The position numbers were made by a program, and so were the translations under genes. 64,000 bases of DNA from Macrostomum hystrix (lineage: Eukaryota; Animalia; Platyhelminthes). The first letter of the stretch is position 1; each line of letters begins with the position of its first letter. The stretch lies in NCBI GenBank assembly GCA_950097015.1, contig CATNEN010000003.1, positions 1,178,001 to 1,242,000 of the forward strand. Reading direction: 5' to 3'. Positions 3,984-26,008 of this stretch are shown here, in pieces. The notes beneath the pieces were generated by a model, which saw nothing but the letters and a program-made list of their open reading frames with translations, did not search any database and had not been told where the DNA came from.

Positions 3984-4067
3984 TTTGCTCTCGGCGAATT
4001 GGCTGCAATATTTCAGGGGTTGCGTTTTGTAATGTTTAGCATTTGAAAGACAAATCCAGACATTATT

Positions 4068-5147: not shown

Positions 5148-5154
5148 GAGCCAT

Positions 5155-6917: not shown

Positions 6918-7060
6918 TTGCCTAGTCGGTAGTTTGCAATCTTAAGAGCTTGTATCTTTGGACTTCTGACTGAGAGGTCACGAGTTCGAATATCGTTCAT
7001 AAGGGATGCAGTTTGCGACCTTGAGCAAGGCACTAAAGTTCTCACTATTCCAGTATATAT
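6918..7060 (+). mobile_element. Degenerate tRNA-derived SINE fragment
   Basis: B-box-like gagttcgaat followed by ccttgagcaaggcact, a motif typical of SINE central domains. Confidence 0.5.
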
Positions 7061-7199
7061 AGCATTAGTTTGGCTAGAAGTTTAGGTAGGTGAGGCGCGT
7101 TGCGTTGATACTGAGTAAAATGAATTGCTACTGAAAATGAATATGCTAATAGAGTTCTTGCGAGCCCTCTCAGTCGACAGGTCTTAGCGAGCCAGCTCG

Positions 7200-9110
7200 T
7201 AGGTCCATCACTCCCGACCTTCTGATGGCCTCAGTAGTGCACAAAACTGATTCCGTCTGGCTCGTAATGGCCCACGGCCGTAGCGAACTCCTCTTCCTTG
7301 TAGCCTAGCAACTGCGCTTCGTCGCCTTCGTAGAGACTTTCGATGGACACGAGTGATGAATCTGTCGATTCTTTCTTGCACCTGCGGATGAGAAACAGGA
7401 CGATATACATGGTGATTCTGTTACGGAATGAAATGAAAAGCCGAGTGGAGAAGTTGGGGCCTACGAGTATAATTCTAAAATAAGAATATTTGCAGTTGGG
7501 CTGTGTGCACTGCAACAATAATTTGGGGTTGAACCACCGCCAGCGAGTGACAATTCTGCCCGTTCCAATGACTCCTGAGCACACATGCACATATGAGCTA
7601 CCTACAACTCACCGTGCAAGACAAGTCCTCAAGATTTCTCTTTGCGCCCCATGTCTCGACACGTTAGCGTAGCGTATGTTAGCGTACGCATGGCAATCCA
7701 CACCTTAATACCTATCTGTAGTTCAAAATTGTTCACTACGGTCGGTCGCAGTCAAGTTGTTCGGTGTTAACTTAGTACCTAATAATGAATAACAATGTTT
7801 AGTAAAGCCAATTAAACATGCAAAACTTGATCTGAGAATACAAGTAAAATCACTTGCTATAAAAATAAAAAGTTTACAAATATCAGCACAGAACGAGAGC
7901 AACAAGACCAATCCCAAAAATACACAGATGACGTAAAATTTCCACTGCAATACGGTTTATTAAAAAATGTTACGCAAATATTACCAACGTAACGCGACCT
8001 CTGATGGCACTGAGCAGTCTCACTGAGCAGAGAGTGTGAAACCCAATGCTCATTAGAGAATGCAAATGTGAGCACAACACTTGCCAGCACTGATTGGCGT
8101 TGAGAGGTCCGGGTTTTGGCCGAGCTGTCCCGCCTTTACATAGCGTCGCAAATAAAATTTATTCTCTACATGGGAGAGGCAGAAAGTCCTCACTGCGGAT
8201 TTTGCCTTGCAGTTTGCGATGGCTAGCGAAACAACCATTACCAGAGAGGGCCATGGTAACTGCCCTGATGTCCCTGCGGCTTGAGTCCAAGCAGGGCTTT
8301 GCGGAGGGCAGTGGAGGGACAAGGACCAGCAGCGCGAGACTGCCTTTTTATTCGAATATTTTTAGGGCCTGCTATATTCAGCCATTTACCATAGACGATT
8401 GTCGATAGGCCTTTGATTTTGTCACAGATTCTATATAATCTCCGAATCTGTCGCTCCGGCCGCTTTTGCTCACGTGAATTTCTACCCGAAACAAACAAAA
8501 TTATTTGAGAAAAACAAAATAAACTAAATAAAATAAACAAAATTATTTTTGGACAGCGCTTACTTTAGTACAACTGTGAGAATCAGCGGCACGACAGTAC
8601 ATCTCTTCTGCGCTGGCTGTGCAGTAGCAGCAGCAGCAGCGTGTCTGCAGTGATTCAGACCATCTCGACTGAAAAAGAAACTTTTGACTTCCTGAAACTA
8701 CAGTAGCTGCCCGACCACGATGCAGTTCTCGAAGTGGCCACAGAATCCGTCGGTGGCTTTGTGTTGAAGAAGAGCGGCGTGCTGAAGTGCCAGTGCTGTA
8801 TGTCGGAGCTGACTGCCGCCCACACTGTTGGAGTGTGTAACACACTAAAAGTGTGGAATGAACCTCGCGCTGGCTAACCGAGACCGGTTTCTGGCTTGTT
8901 TGCCTTCGTCAGTCAGCCATAGCCACGCCGTCCTCTCCCACCACTGTTGGTGTGCACAGAAGTCTCTTTTAACCGTGCCATTTTTATGGCGATACTTTTT
9001 AGTGTTATGTGAGAGATTTGCAGCCAAGTCTTAGCTTTTCTACTGTTGTCAGTAGTCAGAATTGTATCTCTCACAGGCTTTTTTCGGCTTTGCTGATTTT
9101 TCATGATATC
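7200..9110 (-). pseudogene. Pseudogene of the gene B/C receptor family
   Basis: Tail exon (7381-~7200) aligns to the gene B tail (VQERIDRFIT vs MHEAVDRFVT; shared FATAVGHYEPDG) but has a 2-nt frameshift and an in-frame TGA. TM-like stretch WKFYVICVFLGLVLLLSF near 7945-7890. 8044-8093 matches gene B intron 10 and is fused to an ETAQCH remnant of exon 12. The upstream limit is uncertain. Confidence 0.75.
8100..8340 (-). mobile_element. Decayed 3' fragment of the RT-RNase H non-LTR element also present at 23102-25178
   Basis: Reverse complement matches 24675-24935 (ccctccactgccctccgcaaagcc...ggacatcagggcagttaccatggccctctctgg). Confidence 0.9.
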
Positions 9111-9520
9111 TCACAAACGAATGTAACAATTGACTTGAGGGTGCGTCTGGTAAACTTATACATGCTATACATGCTTAAATATTGCAGCTAGGCTAGTAAG
9201 TTTCGCCATTTTCTTGATGTTTTGCTGCATTTTTTCTTAAAATGTATGTTCCATTAAACAATTTTTCTTGAATTTAGAAAAAATAAAAAGTTTATATTTC
9301 TTTACTGAACTTTAAGTGGTTACTAGCAGACATGTTAAGTGGCTCACCTAGTTATTCTAATATCTGTGATGCTAATAGTCTGCATGTACTATTGCTAAAA
9401 TACCATTAAAACATTTCTAAAATAGCCTCAGCCTGTGCCAATCGCCAGAGGCCAGTTGTACTTGAAGTTCTCATTCGCGCTCATTGCTGAACGTCATCAT
9501 CAAGTAAATTTCTTATTTTC

Positions 9521-12500
9521 TTAGTTATATTGCGGAATTAAATAGACCCGCTCATAGGCATGATCTTCACTGCTACCGCTCTGATGGCCAGGGTACGTCA
9601 CATAAGTGCCACCGTCGGGCTCGTAGTGGCCCACTGCCGTTGCGAAATTTTCTTCCTCGTCTTCACTGTCCTGGTGGACCGGTAGCTGCTGCTCAGTGCC
9701 ATTATCGGGGTTAATGATGGAAACGAGAGTGACGAATCTGTCGACAGCCTCGTGCATCTGTGGACGAGAAACCCGGCTATGTAGAGTTTCAAGAGTTACA
9801 ATAATGCTTATGTACTCAGGTACTCAAGTATTGATTTCTCGCTATCAACCTTTAATTTGACTATTTTGAATAGCCAACGAAAATACGGACTCACCCTGAA
9901 ATATATAGCGCCGTCGTCTTCAGTATTCAGTGAAAATTGTTCAGATTGATCAGGGATCTCTTCAGAGCTTCCCATCTGGCGCTCACACATAGCTGCAAGC
10001 TGTCTCGGCTTAATCATCAGCATCAGAAATGCAGTCATGACTGCTACAATGGACAGGGCTGTGACAGAAAATACAATCGTTGCACGCCGTGTTTCCCAGT
10101 CTGGAAACATTTTGTAAAGTTATTTTAGATATTATAGTGGCTAATTTGCCTAAAAGTCCTTGCTGACCTTGCGCTTTTTACTGTTATTTCAAACTTACTT
10201 GTATCTATGGGTTTCTTCCAATGGCACTGAGCGGTCTCATTGTGTGCAGTCTGGAATATCACTGAAGTATTATAGATCTGCTGAGCAGTGCAGTAAACAG
10301 TAAGCTCAGTGAGGTTGATACAATGCCTGCCCCGCAGCTCATGCTCAGTTGTCCAAATGCCGCTGCTGTTACCTGCAGTCAGCTCGACCGTCTGAAATGC
10401 GCAAATCAAGCCAAAAGTACATCCAAACTTCTGTCAGCACAGCAGCTTTCATGGCAGCAACCTACCTGACTGGCTCTGAGAGGGCTCGAGACTTCGCAGG
10501 CCACTGAGGACACCGGAGGTCGGCCGCCGGAGCTGCTCACAGTCAGCCGAGATCCATCGATGCTGGCATGCTGAACTCCAATTCTGGCAGGGTCTGGAGT
10601 GTGAGACACAATGCTCATTAGAGAATGCAAATGTGAGCACAAGACTAGCCAGCTCTGATTTGAGCACTGTGGACTCACAGAAAATGAGGGGCTGCTGATC
10701 GCTCACACTGCCAGCATGCTCGTAGCTCACACCTGACTGATTGACACTGCACCGGATGGACCAGTTCAGGTGCGCCATCGACTCGCTCACCTGCAGCTCA
10801 TGAGCACTGCTGAAGCTGCTCTGCTGCAATGGGAAAGAGAGTCACATTGGTGAATGTGGAGCTGATTGTGCTCACTCATTGGCGCTACTCCGACTCAATC
10901 AGTACAGCACGTACGTGAACTTTGTGGAGCATTGTGACTGGAGCTGCGTTACCGAGCAGTAGCCAGCAGCTGTGGCTCACGTTCCAGATGCTACATCGGC
11001 TGGAGGTCACGTTGAAGAAGCTGGTCTGGCCCACGCGCCAGTAGCGACTCGAGCCCAGGTCGATGGCTGTCTGACACGGCTCTGTGGAGTCAAGGAGCTG
11101 GCTGTGCTGGGTGAGGACTGGCTGTGCTGGGTGAGGACTGGTTGTGCTGGGTGAGAACTGGCTGTGCTGGGTGAGGACTGGCTGTGCTGGGTGAGGACTG
11201 GCTGTGCTGGGTGAGGACTGGTTGTGCTGGGTGAGAACTGGTTGTGCTGGGTGAGGACTGGCTGTGCTGGGTGAGAACTGGTTGTGCTGGGTGAGGACTG
11301 GCTGTGCTGGGTGAGGACTGGCTGTGCTGGGTGAGGACTGGCTGTGCTGGGTGAGAACTGGCTGTGCTGGGTGAGGACTGGCTGTGCTGGGTGAGGACTG
11401 GCTGTGCTGGGTGAGGACTGGCTGTGCTGGGTGAGGACTGGTTGTGCTGGGTGAGGACTGGCTGTGCTGGGTGAGGACTGGCTGTGCTGGGTGAGGACTG
11501 GCTGTGCTGGGTGATGACTGGCTGTGCTGGGTGAGGACTGGCTGTGCTGGGTGAGGACTGGCTGTGCTGGGTGAGGACTGGCTGTGCTGGGTGAGGACTG
11601 GCTGTGCTGGGTGAGGACTGGCTGTGCTGGGTGAGGACTGGCTGTGCTGGGTGAGGACTGGCTGTGCTGGGTGAGGACTGGCTGTGCTGGGTGATGACTG
11701 GCTGTGCTGGGTGAGGACTGGCTGTGCTGGGTGAGGACTGGCTGTGCTGGGTGAGGACTGGCTGTGCCAGGTGAGTGCTGACAGCAAAACAGTAAATTTC
11801 ACTCACTGCTGACATGTGTTAGATTGGCCGTCTTTTTGACAGCCACAGACTTGTATCGTTCCGCCACATTCGCAGAGCACTGAACAGAACCGCCAACCAT
11901 TAGCTCAGATGCATCAAACTGGAACTGGGACACAACTGAGTACAGGATTCTGCCTTTGTTGTCCTTGAAGATCGACTGTTCCTGCAAAGTTAGCAAAAGC
12001 TCATTGTCAGCTGATTCCACATGTCAAGCCCAAAGCGGCAAGCACTGACCTCGCTCAGCAGTGCCAAAACCTGCTGCTCAGCTGAGTAAATGACTGAGCA
12101 GTTGTGCTCTGGCCTGGGAAAACTGCCGTGCGATGCTAACTCAACGGAGACCGGCCGACCCGACACCAGCACTCGAGACACCGACAGACTGCGGTTGTTA
12201 GATTCATCTGAAATCATGCGCATGAAATCAGTTTCATCCAGATGATGTTACCTGCAAGTTCAGCTGGCTTAGGAGTCAAGTGTCTCCCACCACCAACGGT
12301 CATCTGCTGGACTTACACGCAACAGCGATGGCTCTCTCGACCTGAGCTCTAGCTGAGCTGCACTGTGAGCACACCAGAGCTCGTGGAATTTCCTTCTCGT
12401 CAGCCTTGAACTCAAAGTGGCTGATTTGAGGTCCGTCTGTGCCTTCACTCGGATTCAGCTGCAAGCGAGTCGGTGTGAGCTGCTTTCAGCCTTCTCAGCA

Positions 12501-14198
12501 ACTAAAGTACACAGCAGACCAGCCTCTCACCGGTGATACATTCCGCTGACTGCCATCAGCCAACCGAACAGAGCAGCTGGGAGGCTCAGGACCGCAGCTC
12601 CTGACAGAGAAAGCGATGTAGTCACCATTTCTCCAGGTGAGAGGCGAGCAGCCCAAGCAGAATTCGTTTCTTGTCTCATCCAACTGCAGTGGAGCCAAGG
12701 TACCTGCAATAGAGTTCCCTGACTGCTCTGAAATCTCCGAGATGAGCACACCTTAGAGCTCTGGCTTACCATTGAGACGGACAGAACTGACTGTGAGCGA
12801 CTGCGAGCTGTTCAGAAGGAGGAAGGACACTGGCATCTGAAACTTAAAAGTGATCAGCATTGACATTGATACTGACTGCACTGACAATGGCCATTCAGCA
12901 GAGCGATTTCAGAGTCACAATTGAGCAACCTGTCCGAGCTGCCTCCAGCGGTCGCTGCTGCCGAAGGCCTCCCAGCTGGCGCGGCACGGATCCTCCAGCT
13001 GCAGCTCCAGCGGGAGGCTCGCGGCTCCGAGCGCCGACACGGGCGAGTCGACCGCACCTGCTGCCTGCCACTGGCCATCTGAAACACGAGTGCCTTGCTG
13101 ACAGACTGACAGTCTCAGACTGACTGTCTCAGACTGACTGTCTCAGACTGACTGTCTCAGACTGACTGTCTCAGACTGACTGTCTCAGACTGACTGTCTC
13201 AGACTGACTGTCTCAGACTGACTGTCTCAGACTGACTGTCTCAGACTGACTGTCTCAGACTGACTGTCTCAGACTGACTGTCTCAGACTGACTGTCTCAG
13301 ACTGACTGTCTCAGACTGACAGACTGACTGTCTCAGACTGACTGTCTCAGACTGACTGTCTCAGACTGACTGTCTCAGACTGACTGTCTCAGACTGACAG
13401 ACTGACTGTCTCAGACTGACTGTCTCAGACTGACTGTCTCAGACTGACTGTCTCAGACTGACTGTCTCAGACTGACTGTCTCAGACTGACAGACTGACTG
13501 TCTCAGACTGACTGTCTCAGACTGACTGTCTCAGACTGACTGTCTCAGACTGACTGTCTCAGACTGACTGTCTCAGACTGACAGACTGACTGTCTCAGAC
13601 TGACTGTCTCAGACTGACTGTCTCAGACTGACTGTCTCAGACTGACTGTCTCAGACTGACTGTCTCAGACTGACTGTCTCAGACTGACTGTCTCAGACTG
13701 ACTGTCTCAGACTGACTGTCTCAGACTGACTGTCTCAGCATCGGTCATGAGAACAAATGAAGGTCAGCGTCACTCACCCCAGCCTCGCACGCTCACCCGA
13801 TCCAGCACCATCGGCTGCCTCAGCTGCATCACAAGCCACCGAGGCCCGGAGCGCACAGCAGCTGGGAATCGGTTTGTCTCCGACCGGCCATTCTGCCACC
13901 GCTGGCAGTCACCGTCCGGCTGCCAGGTGCGCACAATGTGGGTGCTGTTGAGTTCGATTGTCACAGAAAAGTTGGATTTAATTGCTGTTTCTGTGAATAT
14001 TGAGAATGAAAAATTTGATTCGTTGCTTAAACTAAAAAGTAACTTTCTTTATTCATTTATCTATGACAAAAAAATTTAATTCGAGTTCACGTTCTCACCA
14101 TTACAATTGATGTAGTTACAGTTGCTCTCACAATTTTCTGCACAAATAGCTTCCAGCATCAGCATCAATGCTAGCTGGACAATACCTTTGCGGAACAT
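9521..14198 (-). CDS. Gene B: discoidin-like + 4 atypical Ig-like domains, TM, Tyr-rich tail, ~750 aa; exons 14198-14099, 13990-13778, 13078-12930, 12836-12770, 12703-12531, 12458-12317, 12207-12050, 11981-11807, 11081-10915, 10823-10679, 10593-10466, 10391-10199, 10100-9895, 9757-9521
   Basis: All 13 introns are GT-AG and phase-consistent (2253 nt). Signal MFRKGIVQLALMLMLEAICA; discoidin-like [22 protein letters not shown]; C2-set-like motifs GSFPRP, YSVVSQFQF..GGSVQCSAN, GGRPP, TVYCTAQ; TM IVFSVTALSIVAVMTAFLMLMI; 7 Tyr in the tail. Confidence 0.85.
11097..11770 (+). repeat. 20-bp minisatellite (GCTGTGCTGGGTGAGGACTG)n in gene B intron 8
   Basis: Tandem array. Confidence 0.98.
13102..13738 (+). 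repeat. 14-bp minisatellite (CAGACTGACTGTCT)n in gene B intron 2
   Basis: Tandem array; the same unit occurs at 25392-25536. Confidence 0.98.
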
Positions 14199-14992
14199 AG
14201 TTTTTGGACGACACAATTTACTCTTGTTTCATTTCGCTTATTTTTAGAACCCGAAATGATTATTTCAGACAAGATTCAATGGTTTTCAAAATCAGTCTTT
14301 CAGTTAAACTCTATGCCTGTGTTGGATTGAATAAGGTTTGGCATCTTGTACGCCTGAATTAGAGAAATAGTTTACCATGATAATAGATTGGCTTATGGGC
14401 TGGTTGTTGACTTTGTTTATCTATACTGACAGCATAAGATAAATTATTTTATGTACATTTCTTAGTCATATTTATATTCAGACTCGTGGAAAAAATTTCG
14501 CAGCTATTTAGAAAAAAAACTAGCTAATTTAAAATTTTAGTTTTTCGTTCGACATTATCTTTTCGTGCGACAAAATACTGGCTCAAATCACTGAGTCCTA
14601 TCAACTTCCGGCTTAAATCTTTGACTCACTGTCAACTCCTTTCTCAATGCCTAAATCACTTTCTCAAATACCTTCTCAAATCCCTGAGTCACTGTGAAAT
14701 CTCTGGGGCGAAATAATAGAGCTCGAATGAACTCAAAACTCCTATATCCCTTAGTTTCTGTGTGCATTTGAAAGCATTTTTTTCTTTTAAGTTTCTAGAA
14801 CTTTCCACAGTAAACTATTTTGTCGCGACGAGATGGTAGCAATATGAAAATTATCTTGATTAAAACAAACAGCTTGGCGTACATCAAAAGCACTCGACTA
14901 GCAGATAAAATCGTAGACCTCATAAGCGAAGTTCAGTCTTTAGCATTCACATTATCGTAGCCATCGGAACAGACTTTTCATTTAAATCGATG

Positions 14993-16495
14993 TACAGCCC
15001 CTTCAGTACTGTAGCTCAATCCACCCACAGTACCTTCAGTACTGTAGCTCAATCCACCCACAGTCCCTTCAGTACTGTAGCTCAATCCACTAACAGCCCC
15101 TTCAGTACTGTACCTCAATCCACCCACAGCCCCTTCAGTACTGTAGCTCAATCCACTAACAGCCCCTTCAGTACTGTACCTCAATCCACCCACAGCCCCT
15201 TCAGTACTGTAGCTCAATCCACCCACAGTCCCTTCAGTACTGTAGCTCAATCCACTAACAGCCCCTTCAGTACTGTACCTCAATCCACCCACAGCCCCTT
15301 CAGTACTGTAGCTCAATCCACTCACAGTACCTTCAGTACTGTAGCTCAATCCACTCACAGTCCCTTCAGTACTGTATCTCAATCCACCCACAGTCCCTTC
15401 AGTACAGTAGCTCAATCCACCCACAGTCCCTTCAGTACTGTAGCTCAATCCACTAACAGTTCCTTCAGTACTGTAGCTCAATCCACTCACAGTCCCTTCA
15501 GTACTGTAGCTCAATCCACTAACAGTTCCTTCAGTACTGTAGCTCAATCCACTAACAGTCCCTTCAGTACTGTAGCTCAATCCACCCACAGTCCCTTCAG
15601 TACTGTAGCTCAATCCACTAACAGTTCCTTCAGTACTGTAGCTCAATCCACTCACAGTCCCTTCAGTACTGTAGCTCAATCCACTCACAGTCCCTTCAGT
15701 ACTGTAGCTCAATCCACTCACAGTATTTTCAGTACTGTAGCTCAATCCACTCACAGTCCCTTCAGTACTGTATCTCAATCCACTAACAGTCCCTTCAGTA
15801 CTGTAGCTCAATCCACCCACAGCCCCTTCAGTACTGTAGCTCAATCCACTCACAGTCCCTTCAGTACTGTAGCTCAATCCACTCACAGTCCCTTCAGTAC
15901 TGTAGCTCAATCCACTAACAGTCCCTTCAGTACTGTAGCTCAATTCACTCACAGTCCCTTCAGTACTGTAGCTCAATCCACTCACAGTACCTTCAGTACT
16001 GTAGCTCAATCTACTAACAGCCCCTTCAGTACTGTAGCTCAATCCACTCACAGCCCCTTCAGTACTGTAGCTCAATCCACCCACAGTCCCTTCAGTACTG
16101 TAGCTCAATCCACTCACAGTCCCTTCAGTACTGTACCTCAATCCAACCACAGTCCCTTCAGTACTGTAGCTCAATCCACTCACAGTCCCTTCAGTACTGT
16201 AGCTCAATCCACTCACAGTCCCTTCAGTACTGTAGCTCAATCCACTCACAGTACCTTCAGTACTGTAGCTCAATCCACTCACAGTCCCTTCAGTACTGTA
16301 GCTCAATCCACTCACAGTCCCTTCAGTACTGTAGCTCAATCTACTAACAGCCCCTTCAGTACTGTAGCTCAATCCACCCACAGCCCCTTCAGTACTGTAG
16401 CTCAATCCACTCACAGTACCTTCAGTACTGTAGCTCAATCCACCCACAGTCCCTTCAGTACTGTAGCTCAATCCACTCTCAGTCCCTTCAGTACC
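14993..16495 (+). repeat. 33-bp minisatellite (CAGTCCCTTCAGTACTGTAGCTCAATCCACTCA)n
   Basis: Tandem array between genes B and C. Confidence 0.98.
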
Positions 16496-17018
16496 GTTTA
16501 TAGAAATATACCAGATCACAGTTTCTAATTCTTGTAAATTATGAGAAGGAGCATGATAGTATACTGATTTATTTAACAATTTCTTGAAGGGAAGTATTGA
16601 TTAGAATGACTTAAAAACGTTTAGCTGGCAAACGGGACATCGTGATAAAAAATGTAATTTAGGAAGAATTGAAACATTGTGAGAATCTGAGTAACAATGA
16701 TGCGATGCCGGTAGCAACCAAAGACTCAAAAATATACAGGCTCTGTAAAAATGTGAAGCTAAAATTAGTTTTTGTCTCTGGTTTTTTATCAATTCATCAT
16801 CGCATCTGAATTTTGCTAATGTAAATGTGCCGTACTACTACTACACAGAAGTAGGCACTTTGTAAATGTACAGCTAAAAAAGCGAACTGTCTAAGATTTT
16901 TAATGATCAATTAACATTGCATCTAAATCTCGCAAACTTAAATGTACAGTAGTCTAACTACACAGTAGTAGGGGCTTTTCTTGTGCTAGTTATATTTTTG
17001 CCGCGTAGTGTCGGATTC

Positions 17019-17072
17019 GGGCTAGGGTATTTAGGGTTAGGGCTAGGGTTAGGGCTAGGGTTAGGGTTAGGG
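17019..17072 (+). repeat. Short interstitial telomere-like repeat (TTAGGG/CTAGGG)
   Basis: ttagggttagggctagggttagggctagggttagggttaggg. Confidence 0.85.
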
Positions 17073-17095
17073 TAGTTCTTTCGCCTCATTCGCTC

Positions 17096-20000
17096 TTATT
17101 CAGAAGTGTTGACGTAGGGCGACTTCCAGCAACTGCCGATCTGGCTGTAGGGCTCTCCAGCCTCGTCGTAGTAGTATTTGCCAATGTTGCTCGAGCTAGG
17201 TCGCTGAGGCAGTGGTCGCTCCCGATCTCTTAAATGCATGCACTGGCAAGCTCTGGGTCGCGTTGTTTTTTGATAGCGCTGAAATTTTAATAAAAGTTTA
17301 TCAAATGCGAATTCATTATACGACCAATCGATTGTAACTCAAGCAATTGAAAATACAATTTAAGCGATTTCTGATCAAAGTATTAAATTTATGTATGTTT
17401 TTACCTAGAACATTTACATTTCACTTTTCTGTTTAGTTTTTCAAACTTTTGTGCGATATAATCAGGAAGATTTCCCGTGACACTCGCTATTTAATACACA
17501 AGCGAAACGCTACATATTGAATATAGAATGTCATATGCTGGGCGTTTTGCTCGATCTGCTAGTAAAATATTTTGAAAGGCTGACTGACTTGGCCGGATGT
17601 TAGTTTCTATAGCTCGTTTCTGCAGAAAATCGTGCCTGCTTTGACTTTATCCAGATTTCGAAGTGGGGTCTCCTTGATGTTAAAATTGATAGCAGTAGGA
17701 TTATGCAATCGTGTGCAATTTAAAACAGATGACTCTCTAGCGCATCAGGTCATTTAATTTTGGCTTCTAGCAAGATTCAATTTATAAACAGAAAACTGAA
17801 TAATTTAGCTCTGTACGTTCATGCCCATACCTGGGGTGTGTAAGATCAACCATAAAAGAACAGACAGGCAATCAACAGGTCTCATAGGTCTCCCCCCCGT
17901 ATAGTATGTGGGTCAAGTCTAAAACCAACATTCGAATTATCTAAAAACATTTCGAAAAAGCGAAATTGTTTGAGCTGCAATAGGTTTCTATGAGTACATA
18001 ATTCTTTACTTTCTAGTTAGCGACAGCAAGTCAGCCTACAACTGTCTGAAAAAATGAAGCTCTATGATTATCCAGCTTCTATTATTAAAGCTCTACTGTG
18101 TAACGGGGCCCAACTCACCTGTGAGAGTTTGCGAACCATGATCAAAGCGCAAATGATCACGCATGCGATGCAGACCAGTGCGGTGAAGACAACGGAGATT
18201 AGCAGAAGACGAAGAGCTTCACATGAGTTTTTACTTAGCAGGTTTTTTACCTCTAAAAAGTGTTTTTTCATTTTTTTCAACTCTGTTGTGATTTTCAAAT
18301 TATACAGTTTGTAGGTCGTACTAGTAGTTTTAAATTAGCTACTGATTGAAGCCAACAGACATTGGGATCCCTGAGCTCGATTTCGTATGCATTTGGGGCG
18401 CAGCCTCGGAGAGAAGAGCTAGGCTTGGAGGCTTCACTCTCAGTAGTGCCAACTGCCCAAGGCACAGTGAGAGTGTACACTGCCTGACGATCAGAAAGTC
18501 AGGAGCCCTGTGTGAGTGTGTGCCTGCGTACGGTATCTGTGTGCGTGTGTGCTCAGGAGTCAGTGGAATGAGCAGAATTGCCTCTCGCTGGCTGCGGGTC
18601 TGCTCATGATGTGCCAGCAAAGATGATCACAAGCCAGGCACAAATCATGTCGAGCTGTGCAGCCTAGGTGCTAAAATTAGGAACCTTCTAGGCATTATTC
18701 TATTTTGCCGTGACCCAACTAATTATTTTAAACTAATCTACTATCCGGTAACTATGTAAATTAGTGAAAGCAAAAAATTACCAATAGGTATGCCTTCATT
18801 TCCATTATGATTTTTATCACTACTGAGTCGTGTTGACTTTTTGTTCGTAAGCATTTTGCTGTTATAGAGTCTGAAAATTTCAACTCCTTCGCTGATCTGT
18901 TGTCCAACGCAATTGATTTTTTGCTGGGCTTCAAAGCGGAACTCTGAGTCCGTCGGCTTGCCGGAGCTTATTTTTACCTGCAGAAGTTCCAGGTGGAATG
19001 AAATGAGAAATTTTGGGATTCCAAGAAAGCTTGATCTCTTCGAAATCATGCGAATCTGTCCACAGAGGGTAGTATTTCTCCAATGGGAAAAGTTCCTTTG
19101 CTCTTTCTACTCGTACTGTCTACTATTTTGAATTTCTTTAGCTTGGTGCCCTAAAGTGTTATTTTCATACATTTGAAACTGACAACGACACAGCTGTTCA
19201 TTACGCAATCAGCTCACATTGTTCAGAGTGCAGCTGAGATTCGTCACTTTGGGCAGGCCGTCATCAGTCCTCACTGACCACTGCAAGCCGTTGGTTGAGT
19301 ACATCGATGGCTTAAGCTCTATATTGAGTTTGCCTTGAACTGCAATGAATTCAATAGACCAAGAAATTCGTTAGAATGCCTGCAAAAGAAAGCATAGAAA
19401 GATTTTTAAGTACGCTCGTGTACCAATAGCTACTCACAGAACACTACCCATGTCTTGAGTTCACTTTGAACCATGTCGATAAGCTCCACGGGTTGGATAA
19501 ACCGACACTTGGCTCGCCAGTCTCTATTGCCCATCGATCGCCGCACTCGAATTGTGTGTATGCTGCTAGAGATGTTCAGCTAAAGAGGCAGATAGAGTTG
19601 AGATCGATTATCGATACTACCTTCTATTGTTTTCAATCAGTGCTCTCTAGCTGTGACCTCAGTTGGGAGCGGTTCTACGGTAATTATAAACAAACTGTTT
19701 TCCCCGAGTGCCCAAGGTGCCTTCCCTATTTTTCTTTCTCTCTTTTTTAATTACGTTTGTTATAAAACCTGATTCTAGGAAATATATTAGAGTACTTTGG
19801 TCCGTGGAATTGGGAGGCGGTCACACGCATAATTTTCTTCACAACACAACAATAATATTTTCATAGATAGCTGAGATTCGAACTCCCGACCTCTTAGTTC
19901 AGAAGTAAGGAGCTTCAACATGGAAAAACAGTGTTTAGGTTAGGATTGCAAACACCCTCAAAACTCACATTAGTTCTGTGTAAATGAATAGTGTTTGTAT

Positions 20001-23000
20001 TCGTGACGTCTATCAGTTCGCAGTGGTGGCTCGAGGCTTTGCAGCCAACTGTAGTCAAATGGATGATGTCTTCGTCTTGGTTCTCAATCAAGTGAGGCTT
20101 TGAGCTGAGAATTAAATCAGCTTTGCATGGCTCTGTTTAATGGTTTTCAATTGACGTTTGTTTACTCAAATTTAGCAAATCACAACAAGCCCCAGCTTAA
20201 TTAGTTCACAATGGCTCACCGAGTGAATCCACATTGAATTTTCGGTATAGAGTGGCAATGGACCACGGCATTGTTGATCTGCAATCGATTTCTCTGCCTT
20301 GAAATACTTGTTCAGTTTTCATTTCAAACAATGAGACGGTTGTGTAGCATGCCTTGCCAGAGCTCGACTTGGTTACCGTCGAACTCTGCGGTAAAGTGAA
20401 ATGTAAAGCAAATTAACAGTTGGCTGTTGGCTTCCAATTGTCTAAAGTTGGAAGCTTACCTTCGCCAAAAACGTCAGAGCTTGTGTTTGACCATTTTTAC
20501 TTTTGGATTGCAGTACGCAAAAATGTTTGGACACCGGATATTCCTCAATGGTGCTGAACTTGATGGCCACCGTCCGATTGACTAGCCAAACGCGTGGCGC
20601 GTCGAGCTGTGTGTGCTTGGCAATGACTGAAAAGCAAGTTATGTTTCCAACGGAAAAACTGCGTGACCTTTTTGCTGTTAAGGAGTTTTTGATGCTTCTA
20701 ACATTTGAAAAGTACACAATTATAAAACTGACACGCGACTCCGATACTGTTGACAATGGGACAGAAAGATTTGAAGCCATGGCCGTCACTGTAGCAGCAG
20801 GTGAGCTCAGAACCCTGCCAGTCTAGCTCGGGAACTAGATTCAGTTGGAATCTTCTTGGACGGGACGATACCACTTCAACCTGTTTTGATCACAAAAATT
20901 ATCGGTTTGCTAGGCATGATCAGTAGCTATAGTCGCTAGTCGCAAAGCAGATTCTACGTGACAAATTCACAAGTTTGCTAACCAGCTTGACGCGATTGCT
21001 GACAACTTCTGAATAAGTTTTATTGACGTAGCAGATCACGTTTGATCTGTTTGAGCCCGAATCGTCGATTAGCTCAAACGTGCGTCTGTTCTCCTCTTTC
21101 AGAAAGAGCAAATCGTGGGTAAACTTGTCAGAGGAGGCTCTCAACGAAGGATGACAGCCTGAAGAAATGGAGCGAAGCAGAAAAACGATGCAAGAATAAA
21201 TTTAATTCAGCTTATGCGTTCTTGCGAGCCTAAAACAGGCTTTGAAGAATAACTTTATGCTAGAGATTGCTCAGATATCATGAACAAAACGAGTACAAAT
21301 TAACTTTGTATTATAACGGACCTGTGAGATAAACCGACTTCCAATTAACCGATGTGCTGCTTTGAAAAAGAAGAAACGATACCAGCGTCTGAAAAAAGAG
21401 TGTTGGCATTCTACAAAAGTGTAAATACTCAATTCAATAAATATATTTGATGGCAAAACCTTTATAACGATAAGCTATATTTATAGCTAAAATATTCACT
21501 GACTAAAGCCGTTTCCGCGCCGAAACTTTTTGCTGTCACTCGACATCCGGAGAGACTCACCTGAAGCCTTTGCGGCCACCGTTGCCATTGCTTTGGAAAC
21601 CCTTCCAAAACGTACTCAAAATAGCCTAAAGGCTATCTGGGACTCTAACCCGCTAATCTTTCAGACCAGATCAGTGCGCAATCGCTAGGGAAGGGCGCGA
21701 AAGTGATCTATAGCTAACCAACTGCTAACTGAGCTCCAGCAGGCTTATACCCATCGCACTAAAACCTTCATTGAAGGTTAAAAAATTACCCGATCGGGGG
21801 GATACTAGCTCCTAGCTCGCCAGACTCTTGGGGGCTAGCTGAAATCGTGTCAGTACCAATAAGGACCATCTAATAGCCTTGATAACCAACGCGGCATCGC
21901 GACAGTGCAATGTACTGAAACTCCTAAACTCGATTCTTGGAAAACCGTCTGCTGCCCAACTGGATCCGCTGCTCCTTAGCATCCAAAGCTTCAAAGGCTT
22001 CCGACCTCGTACGAGCGTAGATCGACACTCGAGCAGATTGGAACCGTCCGGAGTATCGTGGATATTTGCAAAACTCGCCAGCCGTTTGTTATCATCTTGT
22101 TTATCGATTTTAAAAAGACATTCGATTCTGTGTCCCGCCGTGCTGGATCCTTGCCTCTTGCGGAGTTCCTCAAATTCTTTATGAGGCTATGATGGATCTC
22201 TACCAAAACACCACCGCATTTGTCCAGATGAAAGGAGACCAAACAAGTGTCTTCAAAACTAGTTCCCGCGTTCTTTTCATAATCCTTCTGGATTACGTAC
22301 TCCGCCGAAGCTTGCAAGAAATAGATCGACGGCTACGAAATCGATCCTAGCCCTAGCTTTCGCCGACGATATAGCTCTTGTCAGCAAGAATCCAAAGACG
22401 ACTAAGCGAACTCTGATCAGACTGTGTGAGGATAGCGCTAAATTTGGGCTTACGCAATGAAAACTAAAGTAATGCACGTAGGCCTATCTGCTCACACCCC
22501 TCTGACTCTGCCTAATTGCCGAACACGACCACTTCCGCTAGGCTCCTAGTGGCGAATGTTAGTGCCATAATTTCAGACATTTTTAGCTCGATTACTAAGC
22601 TGCGCACCTTCAACTCTGCAGCCAGCAGCGAACTGAAAATCTAGATTTTTCGCACAGCAGTTGAACCTGTCCTGCTCTACGAACGCGAAACGATACAGAT
22701 GACGAAGACGCGCGAGGGCGCTCTTGACGCGCTCTAAAGGGCGATGCTCAGGCATGCCCTGGGGATCCGGTACCCGGAAACGATCTCCAACCAGCTAGGC
22801 GCTTGAGCGGCGAACGAAAATTTGCACCCTGCAACTACGGCACCAGCGGCTTCCTTGCCATGTTCTCCGAAGACAAGGCCGAGGCGAGGCCAACACGCTG
22901 GCGATGACTGTTCTTCATCCGCCGCGCGACCAGCTTAGGCCCGGGCACGGGAGAGCTTCTACACTCGTCCAGACCTACCTCGAGGGAACGGGCATGACCG

Positions 23001-26000
23001 CCATCGAGGCTGTCGTTTGCCCGTAGCAACTATTTCGCGACCGACTGTGCGCTAGGGCCTACCTAGCCTCTACTACTATATACTATTACTAGCTCAAAAT
23101 GGTGCCTTCGACAATGTGCTTTTCGGAGCCTTTAGGCGAGCCCTGGAACGCTCGGCTACGCACGAGCACCTCACCCGCTGGATAATGTATATGATCTCTC
23201 ACCGAACTGCCACCTCGCACCTGCTTGGACACTCCCGTTCTGTGAATGTCCAGAAGGGAGGCCCGCAGGGTGGCGTTCTCAGTCCGATCCTTTGGAACCT
23301 TGTCATGGACGAGCTGCTCTGCAGCCCTGACCCGGACCCGGTCCAAAAAATCGGCTATGCTGACGACGTCACCGCCACCGTGGCCGGACCGTCTCCCCCG
23401 GTCCTTAGAGACCTTTTGCAAGCTTTCATCCACCGTGCCGAGCGCTGGGCCAATAGCTGCGGCCTCAAACTCTCTGAGTCCAAGACCGTCGCCATTATGT
23501 TCACCAGCAAACGAAACTGGAGGATTGAGCCTCTCCTTCTCTATGACAAACCCATCGCCATGGAGAAGCAAACCAGATGCTTAGGTGTCATCCTCGACCA
23601 CAGGTTGAGCTGGACACCTCACGTCAAATTCAAAACCCGTAAAGCTCTTGCGACGCTCGCGCAGATCCGCAGAGCCTTCGGCGCCACCTGGGGCCTCACC
23701 CCCCGCCGTCTCTGGTGGATTTACACTACCATTGTAAGACCGGCCATCTCTTTTGCCGGCTTCATCTGGAATAGTGCCCTGGAGACCAAAGGGGTCCTGG
23801 AGGCCCTAAACAAGGTGCAGGGCCGTGCTTGTCGAGCCATCATGAGTGCGGCACCCTCCACTCCCTTCGCTGGCATGAATGCCTTCCTGGACCTTCCCCC
23901 TTTAGATCTTTTTATCAAGGGGGAGGCGATGAAGACGGCTCGTCGTCTTCTGGACGCGGGCATCTCCATCCGGAAGCAACTTGCCTTCAGCAAGCGGAAC
24001 CTCCAGCCCCATGGCGACCTCAGCCTACGGGACCTGGACGCAGCAGGAGGTCTCAAAATTCTCTCCGACGGAATCCCGTCGACGCTGTGCCCACCGCAAA
24101 AATTCAAAACCAGCATTCCGCCTCGCCAGGAAGTACGTGACCACGGCCAACCCCGTGAAATTCACTGCTTCACCGACGGATCGCAAATCAACTCGGGCTC
24201 TGGTTTCGGCTACTGCATTATGTCCGGAGGGAAAACTGTGGCGACCTTCTCACAGCACACCGGCATAAACTCTACCGTTTTCCAGAACGAAGTTCTCGCC
24301 ATCAGCTCCTGCGCCCTGGAGCTGATCAACCAAAACGTCCACGGAGCAGAAATCTTCCTCCACTCGGACAGCCAGGCGGCGATCCATGCCCTTGGACGCA
24401 CGCACACCTGCTCGCGCACAGTCCTCGACTGCGTCGCGCAACTCAACCGCTTAGAGACCCACAACAAGGTGTCCCTAAGGTGGATTCCAGGGCACTCTGG
24501 CCACCCTGGTAACGAATTGGCCGACAGCCTCGCCAAGGCCGGTTCGACGGGTTCGCTTTTTGGCCCCGTACCTGCGGTCTCCACCCCTACCGCCGTCGTC
24601 AACACTCGGATTAACCAGTGGGTGACCTCAAAGCACAAGGACAGATGGATCAATACCGCCGATTGTCGGCAGTCTCGCGCTGCTGTCCCTTGTCCCTCCA
24701 CTGCCCTTCGCAAAGCCTTGCTTGGACTGAACCGCAAGGACATCAGGGCAGTTACCATGGCCCTCTCTGGCCATGGCTGTTTCGCCAGGCACCGCTTCCT
24801 GCAAGGCAAAATCCGCAGTGAGGAATGCCCCTTCTGCCTCTCCTATGTTGAGGATGCAGAGCATTTTATTTGCGACTGCCCCGCCTTCACTCAGGACCGG
24901 CTCACCTATCTCGGCCCAAACCCGGATCTCCCCGACGTTTTCAGGCCTGAGAACATCTGCCAGCTCGTCCGATACCTGAGGGCCACCGGGCGAGCAACCC
25001 TCCACCTCCTGGACTCTCCGGAGGAGGACCGCGCTGCGGACGCCGGCACCACCGGATCCCCCTGCGCGACACCGCAGCTCTAGTTGCCCGTGGTCGCCAG
25101 GGGCTAGCGGAATGGGCGGCAACGCCTCCCCGCTGCATCCGGAAGATGCCCCCTGTAGCTAAGTCAAAGTAAGTCAAGTACTAGCTCAAAATGAAAATAT
25201 TGATTTCAAAACCTTCTCAATGCGACTCCAGCGGCCGCTTCTGCCGAAGGCCTCCCAGCTTGCATTGCACGGATCCTCCAGCTGCAGCTCCAGCGGGAGG
25301 CTCGCAGCTCCGACCACCGACACGGGCGAGCCGACCGCACCAGCTGCCTGCCACTCATCGCCATCTGCAACACGAGTTCCATGCTGCTGCTCTCAGACTG
25401 ACTGTCTCAGACTGACTGTCTCAGACTGACTGTCTCAGACTGACTGTCTCAGACTGACTGTCTCAGACTGACTGTCTCAGACTGACTGTCTCAGACTGAC
25501 TGTCTCAGACTGACTGTCTCAGACTGACTGTCTCAGCATAGGTTATGAGAACAAATGAAGGTCGGCGTCACTCACCCCAGCCTCGCACGCTCACCCGATC
25601 CAGCACCATCGGCTGCCTCAGCTGCATCACAAGCCACCGAGGCCCGGACCGCACAGCAGCTGGGAATCGGTTTGTCTCCGACCGGCCATTCTGCCACCGC
25701 TGGCAGTCACCGTCCGGCTGCCAGGTGCGCACAATGTGTGACTTGCTGATCTGCACAGTAACATCTAGACGAGAAGATAATGATTGAATTTATATCTAAG
25801 CCTCTTTACTGTAAAGCTCGAACTGCCTTAGATGCCAGGGTAGGCACAACAATATTTATTTTGCTTTTCTCGTAGGCGAAAGCTAGACTAGTGAGTGAAA
25901 ATCTGTGAAAATACCTCGCGATCCCGAGCAGACTGTCGGCGCTGCACTCATAGAATGCTTCGTTAAAAGCAAAGCCATCAGAATCACGCTGACTGTAACT

Positions 26001-26008
26001 GGCTTCAT
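17096..26008 (-). CDS. Gene C: paralog of gene B, ~699 aa; exons 26008-25915, 25764-25576, 25364-25213, 21388-21322, 21158-20983, 20880-20733, 20626-20460, 20385-20220, 20132-19969, 19579-19438, 19339-19218, 18977-18782, 18252-18119, 17278-17096
   Basis: 14 exons with the same intron phases as gene B (2100 nt, open). Signal [21 protein letters not shown]; discoidin-like end KSVYLTGC; Ig-like [42 protein letters not shown]; [27 protein letters not shown]; tail with RPLPQRP, YSQI and YVNT. Confidence 0.85.
18360..18620 (+). mobile_element. SINE family 1 copy in gene C intron 12
   Basis: ccctgagctcgatt...catttggggcgcagcc...gagtgtacactgcctgacgat..gaaagtcagg...gcagaattgcctc, matching 54271-54634 and 60975-61258. 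Confidence 0.85.
21510..23086 (+). mobile_element. Degenerate RTE-like non-LTR retrotransposon with TAC/TAT-repeat tail, in gene C intron 3
   Basis: Frameshifted RT remnants ([33 protein letters not shown]-like) and 3' tail tactactatatactattact; 5' limit approximate. Confidence 0.8.
23101..25083 (+). CDS. Partial ORF2: reverse transcriptase - RNase H - zinc knuckle
   Basis: [19 protein letters not shown]; RNase H FTDGS / SDSQAA / [15 protein letters not shown]; CPFC...H...C; uninterrupted frame. Confidence 0.93.
23102..25178 (+). mobile_element. 5'-truncated non-LTR retrotransposon (RT + RNase H + CCHC; I/LOA/R1-type) with a 15-bp TSD
   Basis: TSD TACTAGCTCAAAATG at 23087-23101 and 25179-25193; tail aagtcaaagtaagtcaag; ORF begins mid-RT at GAFDN. 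Confidence 0.95.
25392..25536 (+). repeat. 14-bp minisatellite (CAGACTGACTGTCT)n in gene C intron 2
   Basis: Same unit and same intron position as 13102-13738, but shorter. Confidence 0.98.

What the first reader, a model, noticed from the sequence alone, without database searches (positions are those of the whole stretch)
7200..26008. Tandem cluster of diverged discoidin + 4xIg receptors with tyrosine signalling tails: candidate undescribed immune/recognition receptor family
Seen in sequence: two intact 14-exon genes (B, C) with identical intron phases, plus a pseudogene, all head-to-tail on the minus strand. Each gene has a signal peptide, a discoidin-like N-domain, four two-exon Ig-like modules bounded by phase-1 introns, one TM helix and a Tyr-rich tail with no catalytic domain. 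The Ig exons share little more than Cys and a few motif residues (GSFPRPEHNC vs [10 protein letters not shown]; WSIRC vs WRAKC; YCTAQQI vs NCVGQQI), and the two tails are unrelated. Established knowledge: tandem arrays of rapidly diverging Ig receptors with Tyr motifs and pseudogenes typify recognition systems such as Hydractinia Alr genes and vertebrate KIR/LILR/Siglec clusters. Inference: this is a lineage-specific receptor family for immune, allo- or gamete recognition. I do not recognise this domain architecture from any named family.
Basis: partly seen in the sequence, partly recalled or inferred. Interest (0 to 1): 0.9.

Follow-up and report, generated by a model that had tools for sequence, protein, structure and literature searches.

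The report
Flatworm Ig receptor family, gene-converted head
Two real, transcribed flatworm (Macrostomum-type) genes encode single-pass surface receptors with an unclassified head, four antibody-like domains and a tyrosine-motif tail; they belong to an undescribed 15-gene cluster in which the head is kept nearly identical between copies by gene conversion, and the role is unknown.

Summary
Genes B (window 9521-14198) and C (17096-26008), both on the minus strand, each have 14 coding exons with the same intron phases (1,1,0,1,0,1,0,1,0,1,0,1,0). The third copy is only a frameshifted 3' relic (7234-8022), not a whole pseudogene.

Spliced RNA contigs confirm six junctions. AlphaFold and structure search on the full-length Macrostomum lignano orthologue of C give four tandem Ig-like domains; the best matches are SYG-2 D1-D4 and ICAM-5 D1-D4.

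The "discoidin" head is not confirmed. Pfam finds nothing and AlphaFold gives no confident fold. The only support is a language-model lead towards F5/8-C or F-type lectins.

All detectable relatives are from Macrostomum lignano. The window's genome holds about 15 members, all within 1 Mb of one contig.

New here:
- The head exons evolve in concert. Their synonymous divergence is about 0.06 between paralogues whose other exons share no detectable DNA similarity. The head-exon tree groups by species, while the Ig3-exon tree crosses species.
- An expressed copy, B', has 97% of B's ectodomain joined to a different membrane anchor and tail.

Nothing supports polymorphism, fast evolution or an immune or allorecognition role. 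The scan has already noted lectin-headed Ig receptor clusters on other contigs of this genome; I could not show a link to them.

The parts
9521..14198 (-). Gene B coding span (ATG 14198-14196, stop 9523-9521), 758 codons. Exons: E1 14099-14198; E2 13778-13990; E3 12930-13078; E4 12770-12836; E5 12531-12727; E6 12317-12458; E7 12050-12207 (alternative donor after 12071); E8 11807-11981; E9 10915-11081; E10 10679-10823; E11 10466-10593; E12 10199-10391; E13 9895-10100; E14 9521-9757.
   Evidence: Splice sites read. Exon translations. RNA joints. E9 and E10 donors also fit M. lignano P0007.
14099..14198 (-). B exon 1: signal-peptide-like N-terminus (MFRKGIVQLALMLMLEAIC...), followed by a phase-1 intron.
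   Evidence: by reading only, no signal-peptide predictor was run.
12770..13990 (-). B head domain, about 143 aa in exons E2-E4. Intron 2 holds a 14-bp minisatellite (13102-13738). E2 and E3 are 80-98% identical to the other paralogues.
   Evidence: No Pfam match. AF2 confidence is low.
10199..12727 (-). B exons E5-E12: four Ig-like modules of two exons each (E5+E6, E7+E8, E9+E10, E11+E12). Each module is bounded by phase-1 introns and split by a phase-0 intron. A 20-bp minisatellite (11093-11775) lies in intron 8.
   Evidence: The Ig fold is inferred from the AF2 model of M. lignano P0006.
9895..10100 (-). B exon 13: TM helix (ATIVFSVTALSIVAVMTAFLMLMI) and the start of the tail, including AIYFRM (the M is the first residue of E14).
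   Evidence: The RNA joints on both sides come from contigs with no differences from B.
9521..9757 (-). B exon 14: tail with GHYEPDGGTYVTY, HAYERVYLIP and a C-terminal QYN. The GHY..DG..(F/Y)V.Y motif is shared with M. lignano P0005 and P0025.
17096..26008 (-). Gene C coding span, 699 codons. Exons: E1 25915-26008; E2 25576-25764; E3 25213-25364; E4 21322-21388; E5 20983-21158; E6 20733-20880; E7 20460-20626; E8 20220-20385; E9 19969-20132; E10 19438-19579; E11 19218-19339; E12 18782-18977; E13 18119-18252 (TM); E14 17096-17278 (tail with ...[19 protein letters not shown]).
   Evidence: Colinear with M. lignano P0006 (PAA64192.1), including the tail motif. No RNA was laid on C.
21800..25180 (+). 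Non-LTR retrotransposon sequence inside intron 3 of gene C and antisense to it. It has a 655-aa RT/RNase H-like open frame at 23116-25083 and an RT-like fragment at about 21880-22350.
   Evidence: by reading the RT motifs; not run against Pfam.
12943..13940 (-). Gene-conversion tract of B (partner in C: 25226-25738). It covers the 3' two thirds of E2, intron 2 and E3, at 91-99% nucleotide identity. No other part of the two genes aligns as DNA.
7234..8022 (-). Relic 'A': a mini-exon like the end of E12 (7985-8022, ...ETAQCHQRSRYVG), a TM-like exon (7878-7944) and a tail exon (7234-7396, ...FATAVGHYEPDGISFVHY*). It has indels and frameshifts relative to B E14, and its phases do not fit the family pattern.

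Best explanation
B and C are two old, divergent members of a Macrostomum-restricted family of type I single-pass membrane proteins.

Architecture: signal peptide, a conserved head of about 145 aa that is probably all-beta and belongs to no recognisable family, four Ig-like domains, one TM helix, and a short tail that has no enzymatic domain but several tyrosines.

The window's genome holds about 15 members in a 1-Mb cluster on one contig. Some appear to have fewer Ig modules.

The family evolves as a mosaic:
- The head exons E2-E3, with their intron, are homogenised between paralogues by gene conversion.
- The Ig stalk and the tails diverge and are conserved as orthologues between species.
- Segmental duplication with tail exchange makes new combinations. 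B' has B's ectodomain on another TM and tail.

Most likely mode of action (inferred, not shown): a cell-surface recognition or adhesion receptor. The common head would engage a shared partner. The tail tyrosines, once phosphorylated, would dock SH2 adaptors, for example through the pYxN Grb2-type site SPYVN in C and its orthologue. The ligand, the tissue and the biological role are unknown.
For: Gene models and phases.

Transcription and splicing.
- B-specific contigs cover E12-E13-E14.
- Contigs covering E8 to E12 carry exactly the B' bases.

Four Ig-like domains in the C orthologue P0006 (AF2):
- pLDDT is 75-88 over Ig2-Ig4 and 55-65 over Ig1.
- Foldseek gives E 3e-10 to SYG-2 D1-D4, KIT and ICAM-5.
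- VIA-align gives Z 14.0 over model residues 175-569 to SYG-2 D1-D4 and Z 13 to ICAM-5 D1-D4.

Genus restriction.

Cluster: 15 head exons and 15 Ig3 exons, all on contig C3 between 0.66 and 1.65 Mb.

Concerted evolution of the head:
- Synonymous divergence of E2-E3 among 12 paralogues has a median of 0.056 and a maximum of 0.11.
- The rest of B and C has no DNA similarity.
- In the E2 tree each species forms one clade (95/94). The E9 tree needs at least 3 label changes, and C groups with P0006/14/16 (97/80).

Tail motifs conserved across species:
- YSQIGSC.KSPYVN in C and P0006.
- GHY..DG..(F/Y)V.Y in B, P0005 and P0025.
- SSAYDYP in B' and P0029.

B' chimera.
Against: - No Pfam Ig model matches either the exons or the full-length homologues. 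The Ig assignment therefore rests on a predicted structure of a homologue that is 30-45% identical to C in the Ig region, not on the window's own proteins.
- The head has no confident fold.
- Gene C has no RNA evidence here.
- Phosphotyrosine signalling is inferred from motifs alone. B and C have no canonical ITIM or ITAM.
- Species-specific head clades could in principle reflect independent expansions. The trans-specific Ig3 tree and the shared tails argue against that.
Confidence: 0.72

Rival explanations
1. One reading: this is an immune, allorecognition or gamete-recognition receptor family. It would diversify fast under balancing or positive selection, like KIR/LILR/Siglec or the Hydractinia Alr genes.
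For: - The family is clustered and multi-copy and includes a gene relic.
- It is restricted to one genus.
- The tails carry tyrosine motifs.
- B and B' share a 97%-identical ectodomain but have different tails, which resembles paired receptors.
- M. lignano D-type tails carry the ITIM-like motif SVYLVL.
Against: - The membrane-distal head is the least variable part and is homogenised between copies.
- The paralogues are ancient, not recently diversified.
- dN/dS between B and B' is 0.44.
- No allelic polymorphism was seen; the RNA variants are B' bases.
- B and C have no canonical ITIM or ITAM, and no charged TM residue.
- There are no expression or infection data.
Confidence: 0.13
2. These are structural cell-adhesion molecules of the nectin, SYG/Neph or ICAM type. 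They would hold cells together or guide wiring through ectodomain contacts, and the tails would serve only as cytoskeletal or scaffold anchors.
For: - The best structural matches are adhesion IgSF ectodomains: SYG-2, ICAM-5, CD166, nectins, Necl-4 and Lutheran.
- The only PDB sequence hit, at E 0.057, is CADM4.
- The paralogues are conserved as orthologues between species.
Against: - Fold similarity among Ig strings is generic.
- Sequence identity to these proteins is only 10-14%.
- Neither tail shows a PDZ-binding or FERM-binding motif on reading.
- A 15-gene genus-restricted cluster with a gene-converted head is unusual for core adhesion molecules.
Confidence: 0.25
3. The family is a divergent branch of the F-type-lectin-headed Ig receptor families that the scan found on other contigs of this genome. 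The head would be a degenerate galactose-binding-like (F5/8-C or F-lectin) jelly roll that binds glycans.
For: - The nearest ESM Atlas clusters to the head (P0006 residues 22-175) are F5/8-type-C, F-type (FTP) and H-type lectin clusters, at score 0.92. All ten best hits that carry a family share a family or clan with the best one.
- The low-confidence AF2 model is all-beta.
- By reading, motifs resemble the fold: [16 protein letters not shown] resembles the WW..DL....V..V.I.NR strand pair, and xVSFILL......L.W.A.NLTG resembles the closing strands.
- Scan notes report the same overall design elsewhere in this genome.
Against: - PF00754 is absent at E<=1 on proteins and at E<=10 in the genome scan.
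- hhalign of the head profile against this genome's own F-lectin and discoidin profiles gives probability below 1%. The positive control, F-lectin against discoidin, also failed, so the test had no power.
- The fucose-binding His/Arg/Arg residues and the NR.DCC motif are not present.
- Head, Ig3 and tail exons hit nothing outside the C3 cluster.
- A score of 0.92 is reached by 4-10% of shuffled proteins.
Confidence: 0.3

Closest known systems
Multi-Ig adhesion and recognition receptors (C. elegans SYG-2/nephrin, ICAM-5, CD166/ALCAM, nectins and Necl)
   Same: Type I membrane proteins with a string of Ig-like domains. They are the best structural matches to the predicted ectodomain of the M. 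lignano orthologue: Z 12-14, covering all four domains.
   Different: - Sequence identity is only 10-14%, and no Pfam Ig hit is found.
- This family has an extra N-terminal non-Ig head of about 145 aa.
- It is a genus-restricted gene cluster.
- Its tails are different.
Paired or tyrosine-motif immune receptors (KIR, LILR, Siglec/CD22, SIRP)
   Same: - Clustered multigene IgSF receptors without catalytic domains.
- Tyrosine motifs in short tails.
- Gene relics in the cluster.
- One pair (B and B') has a near-identical ectodomain and different tails.
- CD22, SIRP and LILRB3 appear among the fold matches.
   Different: - B and C have no canonical ITIM or ITAM.
- There is no charged TM residue for adaptor pairing.
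- The distal domain is conserved rather than variable.
- No polymorphism was shown.
- There is no sequence homology.
Lectin-plus-IgSF invertebrate molecules (snail FREP/CREP/GREP 'VIgL' proteins, from my own knowledge) and the scan's F-type-lectin-headed Ig receptors in this same genome
   Same: A non-Ig, possibly lectin-like recognition domain is combined with IgSF domains. These are lineage-specific expansions in tandem clusters.
   Different: - FREPs are secreted and carry the lectin domain at the C-terminus.
- Here the head is N-terminal, fails the F5/8-C and F-lectin HMMs, and lacks the sugar-binding residues.
- No sequence link to the other clusters of this genome was found.
Discoidin-domain proteins (DDR1/2, neuropilin, Caspr)
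   Same: The sole support is a language-model lead.
   Different: - No PF00754 match.
- No kinase, CUB, MAM or laminin-G domains.
- Genuine discoidin exons of this genome (for example L035 and L036) look quite different.

Membership tests
F5/8 type C (discoidin) domain, PF00754 | Match to the family HMM at or above the gathering score | tested here: not met
   No hit at E<=1 on head exons of B and C or on seven M. lignano homologues that carry the head. The genome-wide six-frame scan at E<=10 gave 125 hits, none in C3 0.66-1.65 Mb.
F5/8 type C (discoidin) domain, PF00754 | Eight-stranded beta jelly-roll (galactose-binding-like) fold | tested here: inconclusive
   The head has pLDDT 24-32 in AF2 with 21 sequences and 25-58 with 47 rows, with beta strands only. 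The ESM Atlas lead to F5/8-C and F-lectin clusters scores 0.92. hhalign had no power, because its positive control failed.
Immunoglobulin superfamily (Ig-like fold) | Beta-sandwich Ig-like domains that match solved Ig domains structurally | tested here: met
   Tested on the M. lignano homologue P0006, not on the window's own spliced protein. Four domains span residues about 173-570. Foldseek gives E 3e-10 and VIA-align gives Z 14.0 (SYG-2 D1-D4) and 13.1 (ICAM-5 D1-D4). Ig1 of P0001 has pLDDT 75-90.
Immunoglobulin superfamily (Ig-like fold) | Match to a Pfam Ig model (I-set, Ig_3, C2-set, V-set) | tested here: not met
   No match at E<=1 on exons or on full-length homologues. A profile of the family against PDB sequences gives only CADM4 at E 0.057.
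Immunoglobulin superfamily (Ig-like fold) | Canonical B-strand Cys, C-strand Trp and F-strand Y.C triad | tested here: inconclusive
   By reading, F-strand-like motifs are present (VQCSAN, WSIRCSVN, VYCTAQQ). In Ig2 and Ig4 the B-strand Cys is missing and a Cys stands where the Trp is expected (ELASHGSFPRPEHNCSV, LTVSSSGGRPPVSSVACEV). Disulfide geometry was not examined.
ITIM/ITAM paired immune receptors (KIR, LILR, Siglec type) | Canonical ITIM ([SIVL]xYxx[IVL]) or ITAM (YxxL/I x6-8 YxxL/I) in the tail, or a charged TM residue | tested here: not met
   By reading the tails:
- B has YFRM, YEPD, YVTY, YERV and YLIP.
- C has YSQI-x7-YVNT, which has ITAM-like spacing but a non-canonical second half.
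- Neither TM has a charged residue.
An ITIM-like SVYLVL occurs only in M. lignano D-type tails.
ITIM/ITAM paired immune receptors (KIR, LILR, Siglec type) | Variable or polymorphic membrane-distal ligand-binding domain | tested here: not met
   The head is the most conserved part, with pN median 0.031 among 12 paralogues. The RNA variants equal the paralogue B' bases. No population data were available.
Hydractinia Alr / other named allorecognition genes | Sequence homology to the named genes | tested here: not met
   All hits in 1.84 billion and 5.8 billion protein libraries are from Macrostomum lignano.
The scan's F-type-lectin-headed Ig receptor clusters (same genome, other contigs) | F-type lectin head recognisable by HMM, and sequence similarity of stalk or tail | tested here: not met
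   PF00754 is absent from the head. Head, Ig3 and tail exons hit only the C3 cluster. The 11 PF00754-bearing stretches that I compared with the family exons were lectin arrays without detectable similarity. The receptor clusters themselves were not located, so this test is incomplete.

The most novel reading that the evidence does not exclude
The head would be a new, or unrecognisably diverged, binding module that gene conversion keeps nearly identical across about 15 clustered receptors. All members would then engage one common partner, or one another. The stalks and exchangeable tails would diversify the output. The expressed B and B' pair (same ectodomain, different TM and tail) would be an invertebrate paired-receptor system that arose independently of the vertebrate ones.
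Probability: 0.15. Interest if true: 0.75.

Novelty: new variant of a known kind. Interest (0 to 1): 0.45.

Why it matters
Free-living flatworms have almost no characterised cell-surface recognition systems. This family is expressed, genus-restricted and clustered. It couples an unclassified head to an Ig stalk and to conserved tyrosine-motif tails.

It also shows a clean natural contrast within single genes. The head exons are homogenised by gene conversion, with synonymous divergence of about 0.06. The stalk and tail exons are old enough to have orthologues in another species.

That makes it a useful case for studying how conversion tracts are bounded inside genes. M. lignano is a transgenic and RNAi model, so the family also gives concrete targets for asking what such receptors do.

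It is not evidence for an immune or allorecognition system.

Tried and rejected
- Pfam on every exon-sized open frame of B and C gave nothing.
- Pfam on full-length M. lignano homologues gave nothing relevant.
- The UniProt names of the homologues ('Ig-like', 'SRCR', 'PLAT', 'Vitellogenin domain-containing' and others) are inconsistent with each other, so I did not use them as evidence.
- P0010, P0012 and P0013 from the phmmer search are repetitive unrelated proteins and were dropped.
I laid the part beside it, 9000-11092, as the tool advised. Exons E1-E8 of B and all of C therefore have no read evidence.
- The 30-base loose end at 10213 is absent from the window. It turned out to be the E12'-E13' splice of paralogue B'.
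- A second AF2 run on the head with 47 rows, including exon fragments of the paralogues, still gave low confidence. I did not search folds with it.
- hhalign of the head against F-lectin and discoidin profiles built from this genome gave no signal, but the control also failed.
- I looked for the scan's lectin-headed Ig receptors among the PF00754 hits. The 11 stretches that I compared with the family exons were F-lectin/WSC/PAN arrays with no similarity to this family.
- The idea that the RNA differences are allelic polymorphism is rejected.
- Positive selection on B versus B' is rejected; dN/dS is 0.44, from 13.5 synonymous and 19.5 non-synonymous changes.
- No complex prediction was run, because no binding claim is made.
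Full report
**What the window is.** The window is animal DNA with GT-AG introns, many of which hold minisatellites. It is G000 contig C3:1178001-1242000 of a 220-Mb, 42-contig assembly. Every detectable relative of the genes in question is a Macrostomum lignano protein. Identity to those proteins is about 65% in the best-conserved domain. The genome is therefore a macrostomid flatworm, probably a Macrostomum species other than M. lignano; that is an inference.

**Gene models.** I read both genes on the minus strand.
- Gene B runs from ATG 14198 to the stop at 9523-9521. Gene C runs from ATG 26008 to the stop at 17098-17096.
- Each has 14 coding exons and the intron phase series 1,1,0,1,0,1,0,1,0,1,0,1,0.
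- Exon lengths add up to 758 codons (B) and 699 codons (C). All exon-internal translations are open, and none of the split codons is a stop.
- Intron 3 of C (about 3.8 kb) holds antisense non-LTR retrotransposon sequence with a 655-aa RT/RNase H-like frame.
- My first choice of donors for B exons 9 and 10 was wrong. M. lignano P0007 corrected it, and RNA then confirmed the correction.

Exons were searched one by one by reference, and full-length M. lignano homologues served as stand-ins.

**RNA evidence.** One sequencing study holds part of the B stretch. The part beside it, 9000-11092, was laid on four runs.
- Spliced contigs give joints with CT..AC ends at 9757|9895, 10100|10199, 10391|10466, 10593|10679 and 10823|10915. 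A further break at 11081 continues into the end of exon 8.
- These are exactly the modelled E8/E9 to E13/E14 junctions.
- The contigs over E12(3')-E13-E14 have no differences from B.
- In three of the four runs, the contigs over E9-E12 differ from B at exactly the ten exonic positions where paralogue B' differs. Those junctions are therefore documented on B', which has the same splice sites.
- Gene C and exons 1-8 of B have no read evidence here.

**The Ig part.** Pfam finds no Ig model on any exon or on the full-length homologues.
- AlphaFold2 of P0006 (PAA64192.1, 702 aa) used a 21-sequence alignment. P0006 is colinear with C and 30-45% identical to it in the Ig region.
- The model gives beta-sandwich domains over residues about 173-570, with pLDDT 75-88 for three of them and 55-65 for the first.
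- Foldseek's best matches are four-Ig ectodomains: SYG-2 D1-D4 (E 3e-10), KIT, ICAM-5 D1-D4, nectins, SIRP and CD22.
- VIA-align gives Z 14.0 over model residues 175-569 (SYG-2) and 13.1 (ICAM-5). Two-domain matches have rmsd 3-4.5 A.
- Four tandem Ig-like domains are therefore supported by prediction on an orthologue.
- By reading, Ig2 and Ig4 lack the B-strand Cys and carry a Cys where the C-strand Trp is expected. Another note of the scan made the same point.

**The head.** The 'discoidin' call is not confirmed.
- No Pfam family matches it.
- A PF00754 scan of the whole genome finds 125 exons elsewhere and none in this cluster.
- AF2 gives pLDDT 24-32. With 47 rows including paralogue exon fragments it gives 25-58, with strands only.
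- A full phmmer scan of 1.84 billion representatives with exon 2 finds only about 10 real relatives. A genuine discoidin would find thousands; that expectation is my own estimate.
- The only positive sign is the ESM Atlas. Its nearest clusters to P0006 residues 22-175 are F5/8-C, F-type and H-type lectin clusters at 0.92. Shuffled sequences reach that score 4-10% of the time.
- hhalign against profiles built from this genome's own F-lectin and discoidin exons gave nothing, but the F-lectin versus discoidin control also failed.
- The fold is open. A degenerate galactose-binding-like jelly roll is possible, at roughly 30%.

**Family and its evolution.**
- Head exon 2 occurs 15 times in the genome and the first Ig3 exon 15 times. 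All copies lie on C3 between 0.66 and 1.65 Mb.
- Several members seem to have a TM exon soon after Ig3, which would mean fewer Ig modules. I did not model them fully.
- B and C align as DNA only at 12943-13940 <-> 25226-25738, which covers the 3' part of E2, intron 2 and E3, at 91-99% identity.
- Across 12 paralogues the 104 core head codons have a median synonymous difference of 0.056 (maximum 0.11) and a median non-synonymous difference of 0.031.
- In a tree of exon 2, the M. lignano and G000 sequences each form one clade (95/94). In a tree of exon 9, the species labels need 6 changes (at least 3 forced by well-supported branches), and C groups with P0006/14/16 (97/80).
- Tail motifs are shared between species, not between paralogues: YSQIGSC.KSPYVN in C and P0006; GHY..DG..(F/Y)V.Y in B, relic A, P0005 and P0025; SSAYDYP in B' and P0029/22/32.
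- The paralogues therefore predate the species split, and the head is homogenised within each genome. This is concerted evolution by gene conversion confined to E2-E3.

**B'.** Locus L001 (C3:1561200-1571199) is a 97.3% nucleotide copy of B, introns included. It runs from E2 to window position 10213 inside E12.
- Beyond that point it has its own donor, a different TM exon (LLWAIITCLLLLTVAFGVAAV) and a likely different tail exon (SSAYDYP..., NPYERVIYV, EPYINMP).
- The RNA loose end at 10213 is the E12'-E13' splice, so B' is expressed.
- dN/dS between B and B' is 0.44, from 13.5 synonymous and 19.5 non-synonymous changes.

**Relic A.** At 7234-8022 lie a mini-exon like the end of E12, a TM-like exon and a B-type tail exon. 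They carry indels and frameshifts and their phases do not fit the family pattern. A retrotransposon fragment lies just upstream, and there are no head or Ig exons. This is a 3' gene fragment, not a complete pseudogene.

**Interpretation.**
- Shown: transcribed, genus-restricted, clustered type I membrane proteins with four predicted Ig-like domains, a conserved unclassified head, and tyrosine-rich tails whose motifs are conserved between species.
- Inferred: surface recognition or adhesion, with docking of SH2 or PTB proteins on phosphorylated tail tyrosines. Candidate sites are SPYVN (a pYxN Grb2-type site), YFRM (YxxM) and YLIP (YxxP); these assignments come from established motif knowledge and were not tested.

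**Context in the scan and in the literature.** The scan has already reported several clusters of F-type-lectin-headed Ig receptors with tyrosine tails on other contigs of this genome. The present family has the same overall design but a head that fails the lectin HMMs. I found no sequence link to those clusters and did not locate the clusters themselves, so the relationship is open. I found no paper on the family.

Noticed in passing
L001 (G000:C3:1561200-1571199), about 3840-9135, minus strand: Paralogue B' is a 97.3% nucleotide copy of gene B from exon 2 to a breakpoint inside exon 12 (window 10213). It is joined to a different TM exon and a likely tail exon (SSAYDYP, NPYERVIYV, EPYINMP). 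Spliced RNA contigs show it is expressed.
   Followed up: yes
window 9000-9075: RNA contigs of higher depth end at 9075. They continue with two different unlike sequences in different runs, which suggests an exon boundary of another transcript, or alternative or trans-splicing, between gene B's 3' end and relic A.
   Followed up: no
window 2151-2652, minus strand: Exons of a neighbouring gene match the N-terminal, internally duplicated part of M. lignano P0007 (35-48% identity; weak SPRY-like Pfam hit). The C-terminal half of P0007 is a B-like receptor. The two genes are therefore neighbours in M. lignano too, and were fused in that gene prediction.
   Followed up: partly
window 21800-25180 (also 8145-8344): Non-LTR retrotransposon with an RT/RNase H-like open frame (23116-25083, + strand) lies inside intron 3 of gene C. 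A fragment 85% identical to its 3' part lies just upstream of relic A.
   Followed up: partly
window 11093-11775, 13102-13738, 14994-16494, 25391-25536 and many others: Long minisatellites (units of 12-58 bp, 90-100% matches) fill introns and spacers. The 14-bp array in head intron 2 is shared by B, C and B' and lies inside the conversion tract.
   Followed up: partly
L002, L004, L005, L011, L013 (C3 cluster members): In several paralogues a TM-like exon follows the Ig3 exons within 120-320 bp. The family therefore seems to include members with fewer Ig modules than B and C.
   Followed up: partly
L037-L047 (G000 C1, C2, C3, C38): The genome carries large tandem arrays of F-type-lectin domain exons, some interleaved with WSC-like or PAN/apple-like Cys-rich exons. 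They show no detectable similarity to this family.
   Followed up: partly
window 8031-8096 vs 10594-10660, and 7531-7591 vs 18540-18600: Short shared non-coding stretches: intron 10 of B against the region upstream of relic A's mini-exon, and an 85%-identical 61-bp repeat on opposite strands. The first fits common descent of relic A and B. The second looks like a dispersed repeat.
   Followed up: no
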